Part shown: piece by piece, positions 6,547 through 31,384 of the stretch | Layout: every line of letters starts with the position of its first letter | How positions within the stretch are numbered: the first letter of the stretch is position 1 | From: Trichosphaerium sp. ATCC 40318 | Taxonomy: Eukaryota > Protista > Tubulinea | Reading direction: 5' to 3' | Assembly: GCA_038496445.1 (NCBI GenBank) | Contig: JALMLS010000032.1 | Coordinates: 1-34,811, forward strand | DNA: 34,811 nt | Made by a program: the position numbers and the translations under genes | The notes under the pieces: generated by a model | Seen by the model: the letters and a program-made list of their open reading frames with translations, nothing else | The model's database searches: none | What the model was told of the DNA's origin: nothing

Positions 6547-9500
6547 ATGAAGCGAAGTAGAATTTTAATACTAGTACTCTCATTTACGTACATACTTACC
6601 ACGTGGTCCCAAAAGCCAACTTTACGTATTGGTACTGTGTTTTTAAATGACGGGTTCAGTGCTGCGATTCAAAACCGCGTAGTACAAGGACAACAGATGT
6701 GGCAAGAAGAGGTAATTTGGGAGATATCTTTGTAACAATTATCTGACGTATTTTTAATTCAGGTCAATGATCGCGGAGGTATAGTTATAAACGGTACAGA
6801 ACACCTTGTTGAAATAATCAAAGTTGGAGTTCGTACGCCGCGGAGTTCGAACCGTTTTTTAACTACCTGTAGCACAATTTCCTTTGAGTGCATCTACGAA
6901 CGGTACAATGGAACTGATAAACCAGGGAGTTGATTTTTTATTGCTGGTACGAATATTGCGCAACAACACGTGGTACAGCAAATTCACGAATGAAGTTTAG
7001 CCTTTTTCATCTGAAAGGGGAGAATTAGGTGCTATTGTGGCGAACGAGCATAATATCAACTCAATAATACGCACGTGATTTTCGAGTTAAGTTTTTCTGG
7101 TTTTAGTCTTTGACGTACACTTTTGTTGATAGTCTACAATAGCATTCGCTGGTACACCTTCTGTATATATCTGTGATAAAGTATTGAGATCGCCATGTGC
7201 TGTTCCTTTTGGAAGACGGTTTAAATACTCTGTTGGATTGACTCTACCAAGTGTAAAGCACTACACCGAATCTCTTAATCTATTAGCTAGTCATGGTGCT
7301 CGTACTGTAGCCATTATTTGGGAAGGTATGTCAACGAAGCGAACTGTTTGGGTAATTGCAATATGTAGATATGTTGATTTCGAATGCTGTGATTGAAGGA
7401 GCGTTGAGATCTATTTCGTTTCAAAATCTAAACATTATATACAAAAAACAAATACCTTTTATTGCGATCCCAGCCCTTCGAAGAAATACAATGCGACCGA
7501 TTGTTGAAGAAGTCAAGGAAAAGAATCCAGGCACGCATAAAAACAAAACCTAAACTTTGAGAAAGTCTAACATGAGGAGCGATTTTAGATATCATAGTGA
7601 TGGCAACATTTTTCGCTTGTGAAGATTTTATTGTTCTTGCAAAAGAACTTGACTTTAATGCAAACGTACGTTTGTTTTTCGTCCTTATTTTTGCTATTCT
7701 TCGTAGTATTCTTTGCAATTTTGGCAATAACTCGTTCTGGTTTGATATAGCCATTAAGTGACCTCTCTAATCTCAAATCACTAATTTCGATTTAAGGCAT
7801 ATTTATTTTCGGCTCAATGTATTACTACACTGGTTAAGAAAACTGTAGAAGACTCAAAGTATATCTTGGCTGGTGGATTTATAGTAATATATCTATCGTA
7901 CACTTTGATGTATTGTTTAACTTATTATGTAGTGGGATGAGAGGTTGAGAACTGATTTATACGATGAGACCGACAACAACACAGATTATCATCATTTTGT
8001 GAGCAATGGCACAATTGCATCACCAATGATATTCTACAACAAGTATATACAGCGCTTTGGAGAAGCACCACGCACTGCTGGCGCTGAAGGATATGTTTCT
8101 GGATATGTCATTCAATACGCTTATGAAACTGCAAAGTACGATAAATATAGATTTACGCACATGATAAATCACATGATTTAATGTTTTGAGTTTAGCACCT
8201 TCGACAGCGATAAACTTCAAATGACAATTGATGCTATGGATATCACTGGGTTTTATGGAGAGGTTGCGTTTGATAGGTTTGGTCAGAATCTTGGAAGGAA
8301 TGGATTGACGTACCAAGTCGGAGATGATCTCAGTTTTGATATTGTTGCTCCTCTTTTCGCTGCAACCACACAGCTGGTGTATCCAGTTCCAAAATGGAAT
8401 GAGCGTCAACCAACTTTTGGATGGTACAGTACGTACTTTATCCTTTTTTTTGATCTCTTTTCGCATTGATTCTTCTGATTTATTGTTTTCAAGAGCAAAC
8501 GAGTGAGCATGTGATGCTTTGTTTGGTCAGTATTGTCATATTAATCACTTTTGGTATGATCGTCTGGGTGTTAATATGTCGCCACAATCGAGTGATACGT
8601 GCCTCACAACCACTGTTCGTTGTGCTTACTCTTGTACGTATATTCAACTATTGATGGCCCTCAGGCTGTATACTAAAAAACGCCTAAAATACAACAACTC
8701 ACTTTTCTGTAGTTTGGAACAATCTTTATGTATGCGACGGTCTTTTTTTGGACACTTCACACAGATGACGTTCATTGTAATGTTGTCAGATGGCTTCTAG
8801 GAGTTGGCTTTGGAGTAAGTTGAATTTATAAAACTCGTTTGTTGTATATATGCCTGACACGTGATTAGTTGACTTATGGAGCAATGTTTGCTCGTATTTA
8901 CAGAATTGGTCAGATATTTCTTGAAAAAAGTTTGGAAGTCTTCAAAGTCACAAACATGATGATCATTCCAATTGTTACTGGTATTGTCACCACTGAAGTA
9001 TTAATATTAGCTGTGTGGACAGGCGTGAGTCCATCAAGAGCTGAACGAGAAGAAGTCGCACCATACATTCTATCTGATGACTACTTTGATTGTACCAACA
9101 CAACAATAGATACAGTCTTCTTGTCGATTCTCCTTGTATTCAATGCTTGTGTACTGTTGTACGGTATTTATTGGGTGTACAGAATATGGAGATTGAAAGC
9201 AGTTCTGTACAACGAATCAAAGTACAACAGTAATATATAGGTACAGTTCTGACCATTCAATAGAGCGATTGGTTTTGCCGTTTACACTCTTACGTTCTTC
9301 ATCATTATCTTGATCATCATTCAGGTACTTAACCCGGAGTCTAACACTAAGATTCATGTTGTCCTTAATGTGCTGCTAGGTGTTTGGAAGTAGTAATCGT
9401 TCAGTTGCGTTTATTCTTCGTTCATTGTGTCTTATTCTTGGCCCTTTCATCTCCATCTTATCAATTCTTATTCCAAGAATGTACTACATGACACTGTCGA

Positions 9501-21009: not shown

Positions 21010-24000
21010 TTAATTTGTATTTGATAGAGCTATAGTATAGTCTGATGGTTGACGAGGAGTCATTAGTTTTAAAGGAGTTTCTACGCTCGAGAGTTAAATC
21101 AAAGAAAAAAAAAGATGAAAAAAAAAAAGAACATACTAAAGACGCTTGCGTTGTACGCCACAAGTGGTTTCGCATGTGGCTGTAATGTAATAGATAAACT
21201 TGGTTTATATTTTTTAATAGTAGCAGCTATTGATTCTGAGTCTCCTTGCCACCAGTACGGAATTAGAATCAATGTGATGCCTAATATAAAAACGTGAGAA
21301 AGTATAAAAAAAAATTAACACAATTTCTCTAAAAACACAGCCGTTCACTTGAGTACACGTGTACTGAATCGGATGCCAAATGAAATTTTTTGTTGGAAAG
21401 TTTGAAAAATGGACATTGTCAGAAAAATAAAACAAAGGGTTGCCACCCTTTGGCAATGAGGTGGGTGTTTTCTCCTTTTCTTTTTTTTTTTTTTTTTGGT
21501 GCATTTTTTTCAAAATCAGATTAAAGTCTTTTAGTTGTACCGATATCAATACACAGTTGTTGTTTCTCCTCATCATGTGCTTCACGTGTACCCACATTAA
21601 GGCCTTCAGGAAATACTTCATTATAATGTTGTTGTCCTTATCAGAGAGTAAATGGTTTTAAGAGTTTAAATGGGCTTGTTTTTACCTTGGTATTCGAATG
21701 CTAAGTTCAAGTCTGCTACAAATATGTCTAAGGTAAATGAGGACGTTTGACCATGACCAATAAGAAACTCTTCCTCAACATGACTATCAGGTAAAATGGT
21801 CTTAACACACTCAAGCAATCGCCTTGGGAAGAAGTGTTTGTAACGAAAAGAAAAAATAAGAAAAAAAGAGGAAAATACCATTGAGCAGCTCGTGCGTTTC
21901 TTTTATAAAATTTACTCCAATCCCATTTGAAATAAGGATCAATAAGTTCTAGAGAATGTGGAAATGATTTAACAAAAGAACTAGATCCCCATGTTGCCAA
22001 TTCATCCTTTGACACTCTGTACCTATAAAAAACTTTATAAAAAACAAACAAAAATCTGTTCCTTGCAATTTCTCTTTGTAGTAGTTTGATTAAGGGGTCA
22101 CGCCCCTTAAATAACGATTTTGTATTATGTACATTATAGTACATTTGTACCACAACTTTCAAGCCTTACAAGCAAAATTTTTGTTGAGGGATAAGAAAAT
22201 AAAAGTTTTTTCTTGCAGAAAAAAAATAGCAGCTTACCAACTCTCTGATGTAGTTATCCCCAAGAAGTTTTTAATTTTCTTCAAGTAACCAAAATCAGTT
22301 ATTGGTACTGTATATCCTTTGAATACCCTTGATATAGCATTTGCAATAGATTTATACCTAAGGTACAAGTGATTAAACACTGACTTAAAAAATAATTCGG
22401 AAAAACAGTTTCAAAGTGTCGTTTCACTGACAAACCGCAAAGCGTTGTTTAGATGAACATAAATAAAAGTACACAGTGTTGATAAATGTATTAGGTTCAA
22501 CCTACTGCGTTTTGTTTTGTGTGATACGCGTGGTTGTACTTTTTTTTGGAATCCAAAGTTAAGTTACCTTCTTATTATTAAGCCGCCTCCAGTTTTTCTG
22601 ATAACATCGCTATTAGTCAATGCTAATTGTTCTAAATCTTTTATATTCAGTTTCTTTGCAATATCATTTAGCCGGTCAACTTGTGTATCAATGTCATTCC
22701 AATTTTTATTAACACCAATGCGTCTTTTAATAAAGCAGTTAAAAAACTAAAATTAAAGAAAAAAAATCTGATCATGATTTTTTGGTTGATTTGTAGTACG
22801 TTATCTTGGAAGTATTCCATTTTTCATTTGGAAATAGTCTAGATAATGCCGTGTGAAAAGATCCGTTATAATACCTAGATAAGAAGATGATAAATACGTA
22901 AAAAAAAACACATTTGAATTTAGCTGAAATGTCAAAAAATGTGTCAAAGTTTGTTCTTGGCTGAATCACTTTAATATTTGGCTCCACGTTTCATACTTGG
23001 TCTTAAGACGAAGAAAATTACACTTTTCTGGGAGTTTCTTGTTGTCTAAGACACGAAAAGTTTCTACAGATGAATCTTTGGAAGTGGGAGCAAAAAACTT
23101 CGTAAAAGAATACGCACTTTTTGATAATGTTTTGAGTATCCCGTGTTAGTATCTCGTCTTGGACTTCATGCCTTTTTTATAGTGCGGTAAGTATTTTCTT
23201 GCATTTAAATGTTTTGGTTTTACCAATGAGTTATATTTGTTGCTCCACAATCACTAGCCAATTTTTTAATGTACTCTCGTTGATGAGAAAAATCATCCCA
23301 ATAATTTCGTAAAGCCAACCTTTTCTTTTGTAAGAAAAAACAAAGAATAGTCAAAAACAATGCGTTCAAAGGGATGTCTGATTAGAAGAAATATTCAAGG
23401 GCGCGTATATGGAAAAAAGACAGCAACGGCAAGTGACGTCCAGATGAGCTTTTCATCAAAACTTTTTGACTGTGACGATTTTACTTATTTTTTTTTTAAT
23501 GACCATTTTCTTGACAATTGCACATCTTTGACGTACTTGAACTTCCAATCTTCCCAATAAAATTCAGCGTATATATGCTTAAGTGCGTTTTCAATTGACC
23601 CTTTATATCTAGGAACATAAGAAACTACAGTAGAAAAAAAAGAGAAAAGGTAGGTACATCTTAAGCACTGAGCTCGCTAAATCCCTGATTTCCCAGTGTG
23701 CTGTAATGTACCAATCTGAATATAACTTTATACCAAGACGTATAGCTATAGAATCGAACAACTGACGCTGTGTTGACAGATCTCTCCGTTGTTTGCTTGG
23801 AATCCAACTAAAGGACGAATTAAATACAAAATTGAAAACAAACCCAAAAAAAAGAAAAAAAAAAGAAAAAACTAATACGATAATAGAGAGGACTCTAAGA
23901 TTCCACTATAATTATATTTCATAGCTATATATATATATATAGGAAAGAGTCGATTCTATCATATAATTGAAAATAGAGAGCGAGTGTAACAAAGTATTTG

Positions 24001-24726
24001 ACTTGGGAACAGAAAAGCCAATTGAAGCAAAAACAAAATCTGAAGAACAAAAAAAAAGGTACTCAGTCCACATACTCTAAACGAAGGTCATCCCAATTAT
24101 GCTGAGGGTAAAGACTACTAAGAGTCTTTGCCATAGAACCATCATACGACCTAGAAGTTGGCTTAGACAGCTGTTTTTCTGCTGTCACTTACTTCCTAAC
24201 GATAGAGCTACCTCCGTTAATATGTACATCGTAGCTAGAGACGAAGTTCCATTCGTCAAGAAGTTTTACGTTCAACTTTTGGCCAATCTCATCAAATCTA
24301 TTTCTTTGATGGTCTATTCGACTCCAATATTGCTTTGGCACGCGTCTGGACAAGAGATTAGTTGATTTCTGGGGTTTAGGGGTTTTTTGGCTGTACGTGA
24401 AGTTTAGCGAACGCCATGGATATTCTGGAAAGGTGGCGCTCAGGGTTCGAGATAGAGAACCATTGTAGCTGCTTCTGTTTGAGTGTCAATTCGAAAAAGT
24501 AATCTGTACCGTTGCAAAGCACTCACACCAGCGCTTGATGTGATATCGTTTGCTGATTTAGTGTACCAAACATCCAGAACGTGTACACGTTCTTTTTGTC
24601 CAATTTCGTTAAATACTACTCTATGTTGCGCTCTTACGCCTACAAAGCGTTACAACAACTTTACACAATCTGAAATGCTACAAATTTGTTAAATGACATT
24701 CTCTTACTTGCTGAATATGCTCTCAT
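21010..24726 (-). CDS. Tandem ~70-aa Trp/Tyr-patterned repeat protein (~6 units) with a C-terminal PD-(D/E)xK/Vsr/RAP-like nuclease-fold domain
   Basis: Spliced repeats of the form 'YW...QR..FD.I...L.....DW......I...GG...Y.GS...AL...FP...W....F'. C-terminal 'VEEEF...FTLDIFVADLNLAFEYQGQQHY...DEEKQQLCIDIGITLILIPYWW'. The start codon is tentative. Confidence 0.75.
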
Positions 24727-24952
24727 CTAGAACTAAGCACAACTACACTATTCAAATCCATTGTAGTTTAAATACAACTCGACAGAACGTAACGGTATTA
24801 TTAATGGGTTCCACGAGCTCTTATTCCCTTCAGATTAAATGTGAAACACAGTGTATTGCTGTGGCGCTCTTTTTAGCACCCGACAAACTCTCGGGTGAAA
24901 AACGAACAATTTGAGTCAACCTCTATCACCATTTCATCTGACGTGTGACACC

Positions 24953-26445
24953 ATGGACCCACTGTATGTGGTAAAGATGATAGGCGTGTATATCATGGCC
25001 GTACTATTCTTTATAATGATTTGTGCCATGCCTACGATCCTAACAGTCTCTACTATCCTTATATCGCCTCTGCTGTTAATTGCGTTAAACCAAAGGCAGC
25101 TACAGATCGTGTACTGCCGCGTAGCAGAGTTTTATTTCCCTGTCATGGACTGGCTCCTTGAAGAATGGGGTGGTAGCCGTCTACACTTCTCTGGTGATGA
25201 TATACCGGAACAAGAGGATGCTCTGATCTTCAGCAACCATTTAGTTGGCATAGATTGGCTTTTGATGCCTATACCTTTAGGACTGGTATGTCTTATTACA
25301 TTTAGAGCGTGTAGGCTAATTCGGGACCAGCGTAAAGGAAGAGTTGGCAGTCTCAAGTTTTGTGCTGCTGATTACATATTCTACATCCCTGGGTTCGGAT
25401 TGTGCATATACATGATGGGTACAGTATTTTTAAGCCGAAACTGGACTAAAGTACGTCACTTGCTTTGAATTGCCGCGTCTACGCTATGAACGCATTACAG
25501 AACCACTGCTAAGAGGTTTAGGATAAAGCTACAATGGATAAAACATTTGCCCGCCTTAAAAACAAGAAGGTACACATCACAGCCTTATAACTAAGCGTTT
25601 TGAAGCCATTTAAAGAATTTTGTGGTAAAAAAGATCATTCGTTTTTGTATTTTGTTGAAACAAGCCCATTTGTACTCTATCGCACGTATATTACTATGGA
25701 GGGCATCGGGAGGTGGGTGTTTTTGTATTTCCCAACTTTGGTAAAGTGGGGTGGGTTTTTCTCGAGTTTTACTTTATTAATTAATGCTTTTTATTAGTTG
25801 CCTTTCTGGCTTGTTTCCTACCCAGAAGGAACTCGTAAGACAGAAAAAAAGTTAAAACTAAGCCAAGATTGGGCAAAGAAAAATGATAAACACGTTTTTA
25901 ATCACGTGCTTTATCCTAGATTCAAAGGATTTGTTGGAACAGTTAAAACGATGAGGTTTGATGATTTTAATAATGATTGAAGTGTCTGACTGTTTCTTTT
26001 CAGAGATAGTGTTGATGCGCTCTATGATATAACTATTGCGTACCAAGGAGGACCATGGCATACAATGCAGTTTGTTTTAGGCATCTTGATGCGCCAGTAA
26101 GTGTTTAATTCATGAAAAGCTTTCCGCGTTTTTTTTTACTTCAACTTTGTTCACTTCATCTGTTTCTCAGCTAATGTTTCTTTAGTCCTTTTGATATACA
26201 TATAAATATCAAGAGGTACCCTATTAATGAGGTACCTAACGATACAGAAGGACTAAGAAAGTTCTTACTTGATAGATGGATTGCAAAAGAAAAACTTTTG
26301 CAGGTACAAACAACAATCTTCTTATTTTCCTTTTTTGACTTTATTCTGAACCTCTCTTTAGGATTATCATGACAATGGATGTAAATTCGAAGGCGCTCAC
26401 CCAATACCAAGAAAATTTATTGCAATGAAAACAAACTGGAACTAG
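24953..26445 (+). CDS. Lysophospholipid acyltransferase (LPLAT; AGPAT3/4/5-LCLAT1-like)
   Basis: Catalytic NH(x4)D motif 'SNHLVGIDW', plus 'FLSRNWTKD', 'YPEGTR', 'HVLYPRFKGF', 'ALYDITIAY' and 'DRWIAKEKLL'. N-terminal transmembrane segment; 7 exons. Confidence 0.9.
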
Positions 26446-26718
26446 TACATGACGGTATCTCCACAACCTCACGTAAATCGTTTTTTTTTATCTGAAAAAA
26501 AAAACAAAACCGAGGACAGAACACAAAAAGAAGGTCACCGTCACAACCCCAAAAGGTTTATGTCAAAAATATATTTAATTTTATGATCACGTGACATTGT
26601 TTTTGTAGTATTTCTTTCTTGTACACGTGTGTGGAATCAAACAACAAAAAAAAACTTGCAACACGTTTTTTTTTCTTTCAATCTTTTTTTTCTTTTCCTT
26701 CTTCTTTTTCTACTTTAT

Positions 26719-29449
26719 TTAAAGTTTATGCCTTGTATTTGATCTCTTACTCTTGGTTCTACGGTAAGGTTTATCTGATACAGGTACTGCAAGCGTAGTG
26801 GCGGATTTCTGCTTTTTTGTTTTCTTCCAAAATTTATTCTTTGATTTTCTTGTTTCCTCTCTTGAGCTCGCAGCTGCCTCCATTAAGCTTGGTGCCTCGC
26901 TAGCACTTCTGTTACGATTCTCTGAACTTGTTCGTGACTCTACAGTGGCAAAAGTAGATGCTCTAGACCTTGTAGTCTCCTCTGTTTGTCGTGGTAAGTT
27001 ATCTATTGAGGTCGTTAGTATCCAAAATCCAAGTAATCAGACCTCTACTTTTAGTGTCCTGGGCAGTCCACTTTATCCATCTACGCCATGATTCAACACC
27101 GCGAGCGATATTATTTGTTATTTGCATTCTTGCGTATCCATCTAAAACAACCACACGTGAGAAACACGTGAAAAGAGAAACAAGCTTTTTGAAACTTCTT
27201 TTTCGCTTCCAAAATTGTTTTTTTGACTTGCCTGAACGAGAGGCCATTAAAGAATTATCAGAAGTTATCCTATGTATTTAATAAATATTTAAGATTACTA
27301 TGTTAATTTCAACACTTACCAATGTCGAATATCTTTACTTGTCTTTGATTCAATGCCCTTTTTTTAAAATCTATTAATAACAACATATCAAAAAAAAAAA
27401 AAAACTGCACTATGTCTGTTACCTCAAAAAGTCGGAGTGAGAAATAAAGTAACATGCTTGAATTTCGTTTTAGTATAACCAAAGCCTCAGCACATAATGA
27501 TACGAAAATCTTCCATATTTTAAGAGATACCATCGCCTCTTTAAGCTCTAAAAAAACCCATAAGATTTGTATCTTCAAAAAAAAAAAGTTGTGTCTAACC
27601 TGGAGGAATTGCAAACCTTGGACCAATCACATTTTTCGTCTACAAAAGCGTTAATTACAGAATTAAACAACAAACATTATTAATAATTACCCTCTGTTCA
27701 AAATTATGGCCTAGATCCACGTGATATATGTAGTGCTTAGTCTAATAAACAATGAATAAATCCAATTTTTTTTACTCCAATCGTCGTACAGTAGAAACCA
27801 AAATATTATCTGGATGGCTATCACGAATACCCAGAACCTTGTGTTCAGTAAGCCACGAATACCAATATTATATCCATTTATACTACTATAAACCGTACCC
27901 ATCTGGCGGTATATCCACCGGCTGCTGAAGCAATGAATGTATCACGCTGTTCGGGTGAAAGAGTTGCCAAAAATTGTTTCCAATTTACTTTCATCACAGG
28001 TAAGCAATCAGGAATAAACTCAATCCAACCAGAGTTTACGCTTAATAAAAAGCGTTAATCAACGCAACGGATTGTAAATTTTTTTAACACGTGGGAATCA
28101 CGTGAGTTTCACAAAAACCCCGAAAATGCAGCTAAAATATTTTTTTGTACCTCGCCGGCATTACTCTGTATTGTTGTACAAATGGTTTTAAAGGCATATT
28201 AGAGTTCTCCCACATACGATTCATTATGAATTGTAGACTATGCATTAAGAAATCCTGGCTTAGTTTATCATCAGTTTTCCAAACAAGTTTCGAAATAGTC
28301 TTATTCTTTCTCCTAACAAAAAAAAAAGTTAACAAACAATACCAGAAATTCTACAAGTTATTCACGTGTTATGAAAAAAAACTACAAAACTGCATATGTG
28401 ATGGTTAGTTGAACTATATTTATAGGTACCTGAATTCCACTAGAAGAGGTTTAGTACTGCTTTTGATTACTTGAAGTATAACTGCTTCTTCAACAGAATA
28501 TCCAGTGAATGGTTCAACAATAGGATCTGTTAACTCGATGACATCTCCTTTAGAGCATTGTGCAAGATGACTCTCGAATTCTCTTAGGTTTCTTAGACCA
28601 TCACTTATGATCCACGTCAGGTGCGTGTTTTGAAAACCGTAGCCAATCATCTTGAGCCTGTGTTGTTCATCAAAAATCTGTTATCACGTTTTGTCTTTTT
28701 TTTGCGAAATGTTTGTATGTATGTACCAATATATCTGACATCCTAGGAGAGGTTCTTCTCCTACACGAACAGCCAAGTTCTTAAGAATGGTATCGTATAC
28801 TTTATCATCTTCTGTAGCTTCCAGGAATCGGATAATGAGAGGCTAAGTAAAAAAACAGTAAGTCGTTTTACTCAAATTTTTTTTGATTGAGTTTTTTATC
28901 GTACCATGTACCAATACAATTGGTTTGTTGTCATACCGAGTATAGCCTTAGGTTCTTAAACAAGGGTAAGTTAAAATCCAAAAAGGAAAAAACTGCGCAA
29001 GCACAACTAGCGACGAAAGAAAAAAAAAAAAAAAAAATCAAAAAAACTAACTGCTTACAACAAAAAAATTGAAAGAGCGTTTCTTTGGCTCACCTAGAAT
29101 ATCGTTCGTATACTGAAACATAAATAACCCATCTTTTACCTTCCCTCTACGTCTCTTCTTCCTAACACATACTGATTTATCCCATCCACATAGTACTACA
29201 CCAGTAGAAAGTTCTTTAAGCGCCTTAACAAAAAAAAAATAAATAACTAATTTCAAACTTCTTTTTTTGAGTTTAAAACACGTGATATCAGATAAAAATA
29301 TAACAATTCGGCGTATTTAAGAATTAATTAAAGGCGTTTTTACGTACTTGTTGTACTTTATTTCTAACTTGTTCGTTATCGTGATCAAGTAATGTAATAA
29401 GTTCTAATATTGGTTTAGGTATTTTTTTAGCTCCTTCCGTTGCTTCCAT
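26719..29449 (-). CDS. Small phosphatidylinositol 3-/4-kinase-family protein with a divergent catalytic loop
   Basis: Helical-like 'NQLYWYM', 'IKSSTKPLLVEF', 'LVWKTDDKLSQD', 'SGWIEFIPD', 'FIASAAGGYTARWVLGIRDSHPDNILV' and 'YHVDLGHNF', then a basic low-complexity tail. One homopolymer frameshift near 27360. Confidence 0.8.
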
Positions 29450-29857
29450 TGTTGTAATTTCTCAAAACGAATGAAAACGTGATAAATCACATGGTTTACA
29501 AATACAGACGTGCTCAGAGGTTTTGAGCGCTATTGATTAGGCGCAACTATAAGCTGTACTTACTTACAGGCGTTTAAAGGCTAAAAACTACGAAAGCTGC
29601 ATGTTGCGGTTTAATTTTCTCAATTCACATTGTGTCCCAATCCTACTCGAAACAAAAAATACCTTCTGAAGCTTCTCGCATATCATTGATGTAAATGAAA
29701 GTTAAGTATCAGCACGTGCAATAGAATGGCTGGATGGAGTGAACCAATGAACGTTTTTTACACTCACAACCACTTGATGGTGTTATGAGAGTAACTCTGA
29801 GTATTACAGATAAAGTTGATGTTCTGATATCTTAGGAATTTTTCGATGGCAAGTTCT

Positions 29858-31384
29858 TTATTTTTTAAGCTTTGCAAGCTCTTTAATATGACTTGGTCCA
29901 ATACCACAGCATCCACCGATTATAGTAAAACCTCTTTCATCATTCCATCCTTTGGACACAGACAAATAATCTTCCTACAAAAGAAAAACAATATGAGATT
30001 TTTTTTAAAGAAAAAAATCCCAAAAACCATAAACCCCCTCCAATTGTGCTGACGTATAAAAGTATACAAACATAATATATCATTGAAAATACTTGTGTGT
30101 ATAATCTCTATCATTTAAAAACACCACGAAACCCTCATATGTCCAAGCAACCTTGTGCAAATCCAAAAAAAAAGAAAGAAAAAATTAAGAAAAAAAAAGC
30201 AGGATAAAAATATCGTACAGGAGAAATATCTCTCATTGCTCTGAAGCCGGATCCTTCGTATTCGGTTTTCTCAGGCATAGGTTCGAAAGCGTTTGCGTAA
30301 GCACCTAAGTGACAATTCTTTCCTTTAATGGCTTCTTTGAGCATAGGAACAGCACTTGTTATTGATGCGATTGAACAGCAATTGACAAGCAACCCTGAGA
30401 TCCTATCAAACCCAAATTCTTTCTCAATTTTATCCAAGGCTTCTTTAAGACTCTGACCTTTCTGGGAGAGAAATTCTAAAAGGTTTAAGAAGAAAGGTAA
30501 AATCTTAGCTTTTTGGGTTTTTTCCACTTTTTTTCGTCTTTTCAAACGAACCTGGATTGGTGTCATCAAGAGTGATGCTCAGAAGTATAGGTTTCCCTTG
30601 AGCGTGATTGTAACCAGCTTTGAGTGCTTCCAGCATCTCAGTACTATGAGACATGGTTTCGGCAATGAAGATATCAACATCTTTTGCTAAGTTCTTTGCG
30701 ATCTGTTCATTTGTAAGTAGGGTTTTTGTGTTTTCTATTTTTTGAGTTGCATGTACCAGATCGTATGTCACAACCATCTCTGATACAGGTATCATCTTAT
30801 CGGGCCTATAAGATGCTGATAGAGGTGGTAAACTACCTAAAACAAGAAAGGTAAGGCGACTTTATGGATTTTTTTTGGGAAGAAAAGTTGTTAAACTTGC
30901 CTGCGATAAGGACACCTTCTTTCTTGGCGTTTGTGCGTGCTTTTACAGCACATGTAGCAGAAAGAGCAGTAAGATCTCCAACACGATCTTGTTTGTTCAC
31001 TTTCGACAGATAGAAAGGAGTAGCTGCGTAATTCGAAGTAGTAATGATATCGGCTAATCAAAACAAAAACAAAATTAGAAAGTGGCGTTCTACGCCACGT
31101 GACTTTTTTGAATTTTGTTGAAAAGAACCTCCAGCTGCTATGTAGTCTTCATGTACTTTAGTTACAGCGCTTGGTTGCTTTAGAAGAGCTGCAGATGACC
31201 ATATCTCAGTGTCGCAAAGAGAAGGATCTCTACCCTAAAGAAAAGCGAAAAACTTGTGAAAAACTAGAAAGGCCAAGAAATAAACGCGAGAAACGTCTTT
31301 ATTAGGTTGGAATTACTCTATTCTGATACATACCTTGAGTTCGCGACCCATACCACCGTCTAGAACGTAGAAAGCTTTATTCAT
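29858..31384 (-). CDS. Homocysteine S-methyltransferase family protein (MmuM/BHMT-like, Zn-dependent)
   Basis: 'VLDGGMGRELK', 'WSSAAL', 'VHEDYIAAGADIITTSNY', 'IAGSLPPL', 'FIAETMS', 'LLVNC', 'GAYAN' and 'IIGGCCGIGPSHIKEL'. Confidence 0.92.

What the first reader, a model, noticed from the sequence alone, without database searches (positions are those of the whole stretch)
21010..24726. Modular ~70-aa repeat array fused to a PD-(D/E)xK-like nuclease: candidate repeat-guided nucleic-acid processing enzyme
Seen: about six divergent repeats, largely invisible in the ORF track because introns split them, e.g. 'RVPKQYWSRIDHQRNRFDEIGQKLNVKLLDEWNFVSSYDVHINGGSSIVRKSYDGSMAKTLSSLYPQHNW' and 'TQRQLFDSIAIRLGIKLYSDWYITAHWEIRDLASSVLK.YKGSIENALKHIYAEFYWEDWKF'. 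They end in 'LDIFVADLNLAFEYQGQQHY..DEEK..C...GITLILIPYWW'. Introns recur at equivalent repeat positions (before Y.GS and after the final W..F), implying exon-module duplication. Known: D-x(8-10)-E-x-x-G-x-x-H followed by G-hydrophobic-IPYW is the Vsr/DUF559/RAP-type nuclease fold, and helical-repeat+RAP proteins (FASTK, OPR, HPR) process organellar RNA. Inference: the repeat does not resemble PPR (35 aa), OPR (38 aa) or TALE (34 aa), so this may be an uncharacterised modular binder+nuclease system with variable specificity residues.
Basis: partly seen in the sequence, partly recalled or inferred. Interest (0 to 1): 0.78.

Follow-up and report, generated by a model that had tools for sequence, protein, structure and literature searches.

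The report
Repeat array fused to Vsr-type nuclease
This is an intact, intron-rich gene for a protein of six 75-residue helical repeats ending in a DNA-repair/homing-type nuclease; it is one of at least 150 copies in this amoeba and belongs to a huge, unstudied protist family that most likely cuts DNA rather than RNA.

Summary
On the minus strand, 24726-21099, I built a self-consistent model: 15 exons, 14 GT-AG introns, 595 codons. It encodes six tryptophan-rich repeats of about 75 residues and a C-terminal nuclease domain. All introns in the repeat region are phase 2 and recur at equivalent repeat positions.

An intron-free paralogue of the nuclease folds (pLDDT 90) as a Vsr/DUF559/EDxHD-type PD-(D/E)xK domain. 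The window gene keeps every near-invariant residue. The repeat array folds confidently as five short helices per unit and has no convincing match among solved structures. Pfam does not cover it; DUF4046 gives only faint hits.

The gene belongs to a very large family. This genome holds at least 150 nuclease exons, and 14,307 protein clusters match worldwide (Amoebozoa, Heterolobosea sp. BB2, giant viruses, a few bacteria). This scan has already flagged the family on other DNA of this genome.

The organellar-RNA reading is not supported. The nuclease matches phage homing-endonuclease families, and relatives fuse repeat plus nuclease to ATP-dependent DNA ligase or polymerase X, which points to DNA.

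N-terminal extensions in relatives look like mitochondrial presequences. Function, target and localisation remain inferred.

I did not search or fold the joined spliced protein. I used single exons and intron-free paralogues instead.

The parts
21099..24726 (-). Whole coding region: 15 exons, 14 GT-AG introns (35-268 nt), 595 codons plus TGA
   Evidence: Exon-by-exon phase, splice-site and stop check; open segments. No transcript evidence for this locus was available.
24708..24726 (-). Exon 1: ATG plus 6 codons. Only about 8 residues precede the first (truncated) repeat.
   Evidence: Donor is GTAAGA, acceptor TTGTAG at 24640. The start codon is inferred.
24399..24639 (-). Repeat 1 (N-terminally truncated), split by a 35-nt phase-2 intron (24509-24475)
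24078..24347 (-). Repeat 2, split by a 42-nt phase-2 intron (24192-24151)
   Evidence: (z up to 14.6)
23537..23807 (-). Repeat 3, split by a 49-nt phase-2 intron (23657-23609)
22800..23319 (-). Repeat 4, in three exons (introns 23223-23172 and 23117-22875)
   Evidence: The split Trp codon is rebuilt at the first junction.
22291..22723 (-). Repeat 5 (intron 22567-22358)
21879..22290 (-). Repeat 6, divergent (intron 22237-22023); ends in the W-D-W..F boundary
   Evidence: weak z; family proteins align here
21153..21822 (-). Vsr/EDxHD-type PD-(D/E)xK nuclease domain in exons 13-15 (21822-21686, 21636-21541, 21280-21153, with the tail running to 21102)
   Evidence: Alignment to 36 family proteins keeps the near-invariant residues (A1 numbering): D41, P45, E52, Y53, G55, H58, D75, K78, P93 and W96. 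A paralogue model has the alpha-beta-beta-beta-alpha-beta-alpha fold, with DUF559 Z 11.5, I-Bth0305I 11.1 and Vsr 10.1. The window exons alone give only weak matches, but to some of the same phage families and profile positions as the paralogues.

Best explanation
The locus encodes a protein of about 595 residues. A basic, rigid array of six 75-residue five-helix modules is joined to a catalytically intact Vsr/EDxHD-type PD-(D/E)xK endonuclease.

The most likely mode of action is that the array holds the protein on a particular DNA sequence or structure, and the nuclease then nicks or cuts DNA there. Each paralogue would carry a different array. This would be a natural 'modular binder plus nuclease'.

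The likeliest site of action is mitochondrial DNA, in repair, recombination or maintenance. Fusions in relatives suggest a cut, fill and seal short-patch pathway.

Shown: the gene structure, the repeats, the fold, conservation of the active-site residues, the family's size and range, and the domain fusions.

Inferred: DNA as substrate, sequence- or structure-specific binding by the array, and mitochondrial localisation.
For: Fold and active site:
- The nuclease paralogue model has pLDDT 90.2 with alpha-beta-beta-beta-alpha-beta-alpha topology.
- The top structural matches are DNA enzymes: DUF559 3hrl (Z 11.5, rmsd 2.1 over 93 residues), homing endonuclease I-Bth0305I (Z 11.1) and Vsr (Z 10.1). 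PvuRts1I/AbaSI match at E about 1e-4.
- D41, E52, H58, D75 and K78 are at least 90% conserved and present in the window exons.
- This fits the Asp/His/Asp catalytic set that Vsr and I-Bth0305I share (PMC3239194).

Sequence homology:
- The nuclease of P0001 and of four own-genome paralogues matches PHROG families annotated as HNH, homing or intron-encoded endonuclease, down to E = 6.7e-17.

Fusions:
- P0232, P0264 and P0265 carry repeat(s), then nuclease, then an ATP-dependent DNA ligase domain that scores above Pfam's cut-off. P0263 aligns to P0232 across both the nuclease and the ligase region, although Pfam itself did not call a ligase domain in it.
- P0242 of Cavostelium carries four repeats, the nuclease, then Pol X fingers and palm (E = 4e-25).
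- A giant-virus relative, P0004, joins the same repeats to a true Vsr-type nuclease.

Array:
- The model of 3.5 repeats has pLDDT 90.7 and pTM 0.75.
- Net charge is +24 over 449 repeat residues in the window gene, against -9 for the nuclease.

Mitochondria:
- N-terminal extensions in 80 relatives are acid-poor (4.9% D+E against 11.1%) and basic. Many look like textbook presequences.

Architecture:
- 139 of 159 sequences scanned carry the nuclease, 128 of them at the C-terminus.
Against: - There is no direct evidence for any substrate.
- RAP-domain proteins of mitoribosomes and FASTKD4 match the fold almost as well (Z 10.1 and 9.4, effectively tied).
- An ESM Atlas neighbour cluster is auto-named 'RAP domain-containing'.
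- The window protein has only about 8 residues before its first repeat, so it has no clear presequence of its own.
- Variable repeat positions are scattered rather than forming an obvious code.
- The repeat's best structural matches are weak (Z 4.4 TetR helix-turn-helix, Z 4.0 Slx4 CCD), so nucleic-acid binding by the array is itself inferred.
- The structure models are of paralogues, not of this gene.
- The second haplotype copy carries a premature stop, so this particular locus may be dispensable.
Confidence: 0.5

Rival explanations
1. Organellar RNA processor. The array would read mitochondrial transcripts and the RAP-like domain would cleave or simply hold RNA, as in FASTK, OPR-RAP or HPR-RAP proteins.
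For: - The architecture is analogous to those families.
- RAP domains of Toxoplasma mitoribosomal proteins (Z 10.1) and FASTKD4 (Z 9.4) match the fold. Foldseek also hits mitoribosome chains.
- The N-terminal extensions look like presequences.
- An Atlas neighbour cluster is named RAP domain-containing.
- The host has heavily edited mitochondrial RNA, according to scan notes that I did not test.
Against: - No RAP, FAST, OPR or HPR model matches at E up to 1 in the window exons, four open frames of own-genome paralogues and 45 family members.
- The only significant sequence homology is to DNA homing endonucleases.
- The fusions are to DNA ligase and Pol X, not to RNA enzymes.
- The same repeats occur in giant viruses and bacteria.
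- FASTKD4's site is degenerate (Asn in place of His; PMC11879112), whereas this family keeps the His.
Confidence: 0.2
2. Selfish or defensive nuclear-acting nucleases. The family would be domesticated or free-standing homing-endonuclease-like genes, or an innate anti-giant-virus arsenal whose varied arrays recognise foreign DNA.
For: - The nuclease is homologous to phage homing endonucleases.
- The family is hugely expanded and fast-diverging: at least 150 nuclease exons here and 976-1631 candidate repeat matches.
- Giant viruses carry the repeats.
- One haplotype copy is broken.
- Earlier notes report tandem clusters.
Against: - The genes carry many host-type introns at conserved positions and are not inside introns or inteins.
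- No PADLOC defence family matches.
- The N-termini look mitochondrial rather than nuclear in many members.
- The ligase and Pol X fusions suggest repair rather than destruction.
Confidence: 0.15
3. The array is a protein-protein or scaffold module with no nucleic-acid specificity, and merely tethers a general nuclease (or ligase or polymerase) to a complex.
For: - The same array is attached to several different enzymes.
- Repeat-only proteins exist.
- The best structural hits include Slx4 CCD, a nuclease-binding helical domain.
- No clear code positions were found.
Against: - The array has a strong positive charge.
- The N-Q-R and Lys positions on helix 1 are conserved.
- Extreme paralogue diversification is more typical of sequence readers.
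Confidence: 0.1

Closest known systems
EDxHD homing endonucleases (I-Bth0305I) and Vsr / DUF559 nucleases
   Same: - Same nuclease fold (Z 10.1-11.5).
- Conserved Asp/His/Asp set.
- Significant sequence matches to phage homing-endonuclease families.
- Same overall layout: N-terminal modular helical binding region plus C-terminal nuclease (PMC3239194).
   Different: - The binding region here is 2-25 copies of a 75-residue five-helix module, not two NUMOD/helix-turn-helix motifs.
- The genes are nuclear, intron-rich and massively paralogous, not embedded in introns or inteins.
- There is no zinc site of the Vsr type.
- Pfam DUF559, Vsr and DUF2726 models are not reached at their curated cut-offs.
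Helical-repeat plus RAP proteins (FASTK family, OPR-RAP, HPR-RAP)
   Same: - Helical array followed by a C-terminal Vsr-like domain.
- Fold match to RAP domains (Z 9.4-10.1).
- Probable mitochondrial targeting (inferred).
   Different: - No RAP/FAST/OPR/HPR sequence match.
- Repeat period is 75 residues, not 37-40, and the repeat fold is unmatched.
- The catalytic His is retained, unlike in FASTKD4.
- Fusion partners point to DNA.
Pfam DUF4046 (PF13255)
   Same: - The 90-position model aligns to one repeat in a few relatives (P0246: 21.7 bits, profile positions 12-87).
- Precomputed PF13255.12 marks sit on about 15 of 120 homologues.
   Different: - The curated cut-off (22.8 bits) is not reached by any sequence I scanned.
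- Only 3 of 45 members score at E up to 1.
- The one mark I could inspect was 'faint'.
- No paper mentions the family.
TALE / PPR / PUF code-reading repeat arrays
   Same: Tandem helical modules of fixed period, basic, highly diversified among paralogues, and sometimes joined to a nuclease.
   Different: - Module length (75 residues) and five-helix fold differ.
- No defined hypervariable code positions were found.
- No binding data exist.

Membership tests
Vsr-like / EDxHD PD-(D/E)xK nucleases | Alpha-beta-beta-beta-alpha-beta core fold of restriction-endonuclease type | tested here: met
   Model of paralogue L009:1660-2034 has pLDDT 90.2 and the expected topology. Z is 11.5, 11.1 and 10.1 to DUF559, I-Bth0305I and Vsr. 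This was tested on a paralogue, not on the split window gene.
Vsr-like / EDxHD PD-(D/E)xK nucleases | Conserved catalytic Asp, His and second Asp (Vsr D51, H69, D97; I-Bth0305I D196, H213, D222) | tested here: met
   D41, H58 and D75 (plus E52 and K78) are at least 90% conserved in 41 sequences and present in window exons 13-14. Their one-to-one equivalence with the Vsr residues is inferred from motif order, not from a superposition.
Vsr-like / EDxHD PD-(D/E)xK nucleases | Significant match to a family profile | tested here: inconclusive
   PHROG homing-endonuclease families match paralogues and homologues at E = 6.7e-17 to 2.6e-6. The window exons alone give only E = 0.019-0.11. Pfam DUF2726 matches 14 of 45 members, all below cut-off. 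DUF559 gives E = 0.11 and only in the viral relative. A PDB sequence profile search found nothing.
RAP-domain organellar RNA-binding proteins (FASTK, OPR-RAP, HPR-RAP) | Match to the RAP domain model, preceded by FAST/OPR/HPR repeats | tested here: not met
   No PF08373, FAST_1/2 or other such hit at E up to 1 in any scan. The repeat model has no match to HPR/OPR/FAST structures. Only fold-level similarity of the nuclease was found.
RAP-domain organellar RNA-binding proteins (FASTK, OPR-RAP, HPR-RAP) | Organellar localisation and RNA binding | not testable with these tools
   Only the composition of N-terminal extensions in relatives is suggestive.
DUF4046 (PF13255) | Score at or above the curated cut-off of 22.8 bits | tested here: not met
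   No hit on the window exons or on the paralogue open frames scanned. A six-frame search of the genome found none. 3 of 45 members match, best E = 0.068. The best score seen was 21.7 bits in P0246.
Homing endonuclease genes (mobile) | Located in a self-splicing intron or intein, or free-standing in a phage or organelle genome, with a homing site | tested here: not met
   This is a nuclear-type gene with 14 spliceosomal-type introns between ordinary genes. A haplotig shares the same flanks.
Code-reading repeat arrays (TALE/PPR/PUF-like) | A few hypervariable positions per repeat that specify the base | tested here: inconclusive
   Entropy was computed over 1257 repeats. The high-entropy positions (17, 20, 32, 35, 36, 39, 44, 45, 48, 55) are spread over all five helices. 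No coordinates were available to test whether they share one face.

The most novel reading that the evidence does not exclude
The family could supply the long-sought site-recognition factors for insertional mitochondrial RNA editing.

Heterolobosea sp. BB2 has about 500 insertions that each duplicate a neighbouring base, with no sequence motif at the sites and an unknown mechanism (PMC5421314). Physarum is the classic organism for insertional mitochondrial editing, and this genome is said by scan notes to be edited in the same way as BB2. All three carry the family.

On this reading, hundreds of different arrays would each mark a template site on mitochondrial DNA by binding or nicking it, making the polymerase stutter there.
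Probability: 0.05. Interest if true: 0.95.

Novelty: new variant of a known kind. Interest (0 to 1): 0.6.

Why it matters
If the arrays read DNA in a modular way, this would be a natural, massively diversified 'programmable binder plus nuclease' system in eukaryotes. Its repeat fold is absent from the Protein Data Bank. That would interest both organelle-genome biology and genome engineering.

The family is very large: 14,307 clusters at 50% identity, and at least 150 copies in this 70-Mb genome. I found no paper that names it, so tens of thousands of proteins lack any functional handle.

The ligase and Pol X fusions suggest a specific experiment: testing for a nick, fill and seal DNA pathway.

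The family occurs in three lineages with insertional mitochondrial editing. That makes an old open question, how editing sites are chosen, at least approachable, although the link is weak at present.

Tried and rejected
- Pfam scans of all 14 open exon segments found nothing.
- A six-frame search of the genome with PF13255 found nothing, and the tool's controls were silent too.
- Pfam scans of four intron-free open frames from own-genome paralogues found nothing.
- PDB sequence searches, by single sequence and by profile, found nothing.
- Foldseek of the repeat model against PDB and the BFVD viral library gave no hit below E = 0.39.
- VIA-wide on the repeat model gave a best Z of 4.4, which is not meaningful for a helical module.
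- NCBIfam and PADLOC gave nothing for the eukaryotic members. Only the giant-virus relative touches Vsr models.
With P0001 it found no viral locus.
- A search of the genome with the Pol X fusion protein was swamped by repeat matches and says nothing about fusions here.
- The first reference syntax (larger coordinate first) and the first frames chosen were slips, and I corrected them.
I redid the step from coordinates only.
- I did not search or fold the joined spliced protein.
- The ciliate-code idea, raised by an in-frame stop between two exons, was rejected: a 42-nt GT-AG intron explains it.
- P0001 is not this species' transcript (33-43% identity), so it gives no expression evidence for this locus.
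Full report
**What is there**

The window is eukaryotic, at about 36% G+C. Notes of this scan describe the genome as an amoeba. The assembly is 70.3 Mb in 642 contigs.

On the minus strand between 24726 and 21099, the open segments link into 15 exons through 14 GT-AG introns of 35-268 nt. A coordinate-only script confirmed three things: every exon is open in its phase, the total is 1785 nt (595 codons), and a TGA follows. Three junction codons rebuild the conserved Trp and two rebuild a conserved Gly.

I did not search or fold the joined protein. All searches used single exons by reference, or intron-free paralogues and homologues. No transcript of this locus was available, so the splicing is inferred.

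**The repeats**

Pairwise comparison of the half-repeats against 300 shuffles gives z up to 14.6. R1-R5 are solid and R6 is degenerate.

I built a repeat profile iteratively from one paralogue repeat. It finds 1257 repeats in 159 sequences scanned (157 family proteins plus two own-genome frames), with a modal period of 75 residues and 2-25 repeats per protein, median 7. The consensus runs P-x-x-(Y/F)-W ... N-Q-R-x-F ... D-W-Y ... G-G-x-x-L-L-x-x-Y ... L-x-x-x-Y-P-x-x-x-W-x-F.

Five of the six repeats are cut by a phase-2 intron just before the Y-x-G-S half. Three repeat boundaries and two D-W positions also carry phase-2 introns. Exons 3-12 are therefore all symmetric. Many paralogues match the 94-residue exon end to end, which suggests that this exon structure is shared across the family.

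**The nuclease**

Window exons 13-15 align with 36 family proteins and two own-genome paralogues. They keep all near-invariant residues: D41, P45, E52, Y53, G55, H58, D75, K78, P93 and W96 in A1 numbering.

The domain is intron-free in paralogue L009. Its model has pLDDT 90.2 and alpha-beta-beta-beta-alpha-beta-alpha topology. Comparing that model with about 48,000 representative solved PDB chains gives:

| Match | Z |
|---|---|
| DUF559 protein 3hrl (rmsd 2.1 over 93 residues) | 11.5 |
| Homing endonuclease I-Bth0305I | 11.1 |
| Vsr | 10.1 |
| RAP protein of the Toxoplasma mitoribosome | 10.1 |
| FASTKD4 RAP | 9.4 |

Foldseek agrees, with PvuRts1I/AbaSI at about 1e-4. The conserved residues fit the Asp/His/Asp set shared by Vsr and the EDxHD homing endonucleases (PMC3239194). 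FASTKD4, by contrast, has Asn at the His position and is reported to be inactive (PMC11879112).

By sequence, the nuclease of P0001 and of four paralogues from this genome matches phage families annotated as HNH, homing or intron-encoded endonucleases, with E from 6.7e-17 to 2.6e-6. The short window exons give weak matches (E = 0.019-0.11) to some of the same families and profile positions.

**The array fold**

A 269-residue stretch of 3.5 repeats from paralogue L002 folds with pLDDT 90.7 and pTM 0.75, with five short helices per repeat.

- Foldseek against PDB and the BFVD viral library gives nothing below E = 0.39.
- The wide structural search peaks at Z 4.4 (TetR helix-turn-helix region) and Z 4.0 (Slx4 CCD), which is not meaningful.
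- Pfam does not cover the repeat. DUF4046 appears in 3 of 45 members (best E = 0.068), and at 21.7 bits against a cut-off of 22.8 in one NCBI protein. The one precomputed mark I could inspect was 'faint'.
- No paper mentions DUF4046 or PF13255.

I can confirm only a faint relation.

**Family size and range**

- In this genome, the nuclease exon finds 150 scored matches out of 270 candidates. The repeat exon finds 150 of 976. P0001 raises 1631 first-look candidates.
- phmmer with P0001 against 1.84 billion representative proteins gives 14,307 hits at E up to 1e-3 and 1,903 at E up to 1e-30.
- 139 of the 159 sequences scanned carry the nuclease, 128 of them at the C-terminus.
- Named sources are Heterolobosea sp. 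BB2, Cavostelium, Physarum, Echinamoeba, Nematostelium and MMETSP transcripts, several of them recorded as complete ORFs.
- Atlas neighbours add Tubulinea and Nucleocytoviricota.
- A giant-virus-like contig encodes the repeats joined to a true Vsr-type nuclease.
- A planctomycete-like contig encodes a repeat-only protein.

**DNA or RNA**

The fold alone cannot decide this. Three lines favour DNA:

1. The significant sequence homology is to DNA homing endonucleases.
2. The catalytic set is retained.
3. The domain fusions involve DNA enzymes. P0232, P0264 and P0265 carry repeat(s), then nuclease, then an ATP-dependent DNA ligase domain that scores above Pfam's cut-off. They share 35-36% identity across both parts. 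P0263 aligns to P0232 over the same span, although Pfam did not call a ligase domain in it. Cavostelium P0242 carries repeats, nuclease and Pol X fingers and palm. A Physarum protein has a faint match (E = 0.0094, below cut-off) to the end of a ligase domain before seven repeats.

Nuclease, gap-filling polymerase and ligase together are the parts list of short-patch DNA repair. That is what Vsr itself initiates (established knowledge).

**Localisation**

In 80 relatives, the residues before the first repeat are acid-poor (4.9% D+E against 11.1% overall) and basic. Many look like mitochondrial presequences. This is suggestive only. The window protein itself has barely eight residues before its first repeat.

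The repeat part of the window protein is strongly basic (+24), while the nuclease is acidic (-9).

**Other points**

- Contig C345 is a 97.5%-identical haplotig of window 21851-30862.
- Its copy differs by 14 synonymous and 9 non-synonymous codons, and carries a TAG in the R1-R2 linker. One allele may therefore be broken.
- The family occurs in BB2, in Physarum and in this genome, which are three lineages with insertional mitochondrial RNA editing. In BB2, site choice is unexplained (PMC5421314).
- The family also occurs in amoebae for which I found no report of such editing, so I rate the link as a long shot.

**Verdict**

The fold and novelty parts of the interpretation are supported. The RNA-processing part is not supported, and DNA is the more likely substrate.

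The family is undescribed in the literature I could search. This scan had already found it on other DNA of the same genome (notes s1-372462, s1-372597, s1-378517, s1-390591).

Noticed in passing
L005 (G000:C345:1-9000) = window 21851-30862: A second contig is 97.5% identical over 9 kb, so it is probably the other haplotype. Its copy of this gene has a TTG-to-TAG change in the linker between repeats 1 and 2, plus 14 synonymous and 9 non-synonymous codon differences. The contig ends inside the gene, so its nuclease part is not assembled.
   Followed up: partly
P0232, P0263, P0264, P0265 (MMETSP, EukProt, JGI); P0242 (Cavostelium); P0241 (Physarum): Relatives fuse the repeat-nuclease unit to an ATP-dependent DNA ligase (three proteins with a Pfam-called ligase domain, plus P0263 which aligns over the same span) or to DNA polymerase X fingers and palm. 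A Physarum protein has a faint, below-cut-off match to the end of a ligase domain before seven repeats.
   Followed up: partly
L010 / L011 (metagenome contigs carrying P0004); L014 (IMG/VR): A giant-virus-like contig (AEP_C962R primase, UvrD-like helicase) encodes four of the same repeats joined to a classical Vsr-type nuclease instead of the family's own nuclease. A 46%-identical relative lies on an IMG/VR contig.
   Followed up: partly
L012 (JGI contig, 484 kb) 8001-9200: A bacterial, planctomycete-like contig encodes a repeat-only protein of five repeats. It lies between a Cas3/GSU0053/GSU0054-type CRISPR-Cas cluster with a small HNH gene and a TraG-like coupling protein.
   Followed up: no
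P0155 (2513 aa), P0007 (1641 aa): Some predicted proteins hold up to three nuclease domains, each preceded by repeats. These are most likely tandem family genes merged by gene callers, which fits the tandem clusters noted elsewhere in this genome.
   Followed up: no
window 24911-25468 (+) and onward: The divergently oriented neighbour looks, by my own reading, like an intron-split acyltransferase with the N-H-x4-D motif. It is also present on the haplotig.
   Followed up: no
window 24800-24727 (-): A short upstream ATG opens a 12-codon frame ending in a TGA that overlaps the proposed start codon. This could be an upstream ORF, or a sign that the true 5' exon differs.
   Followed up: no
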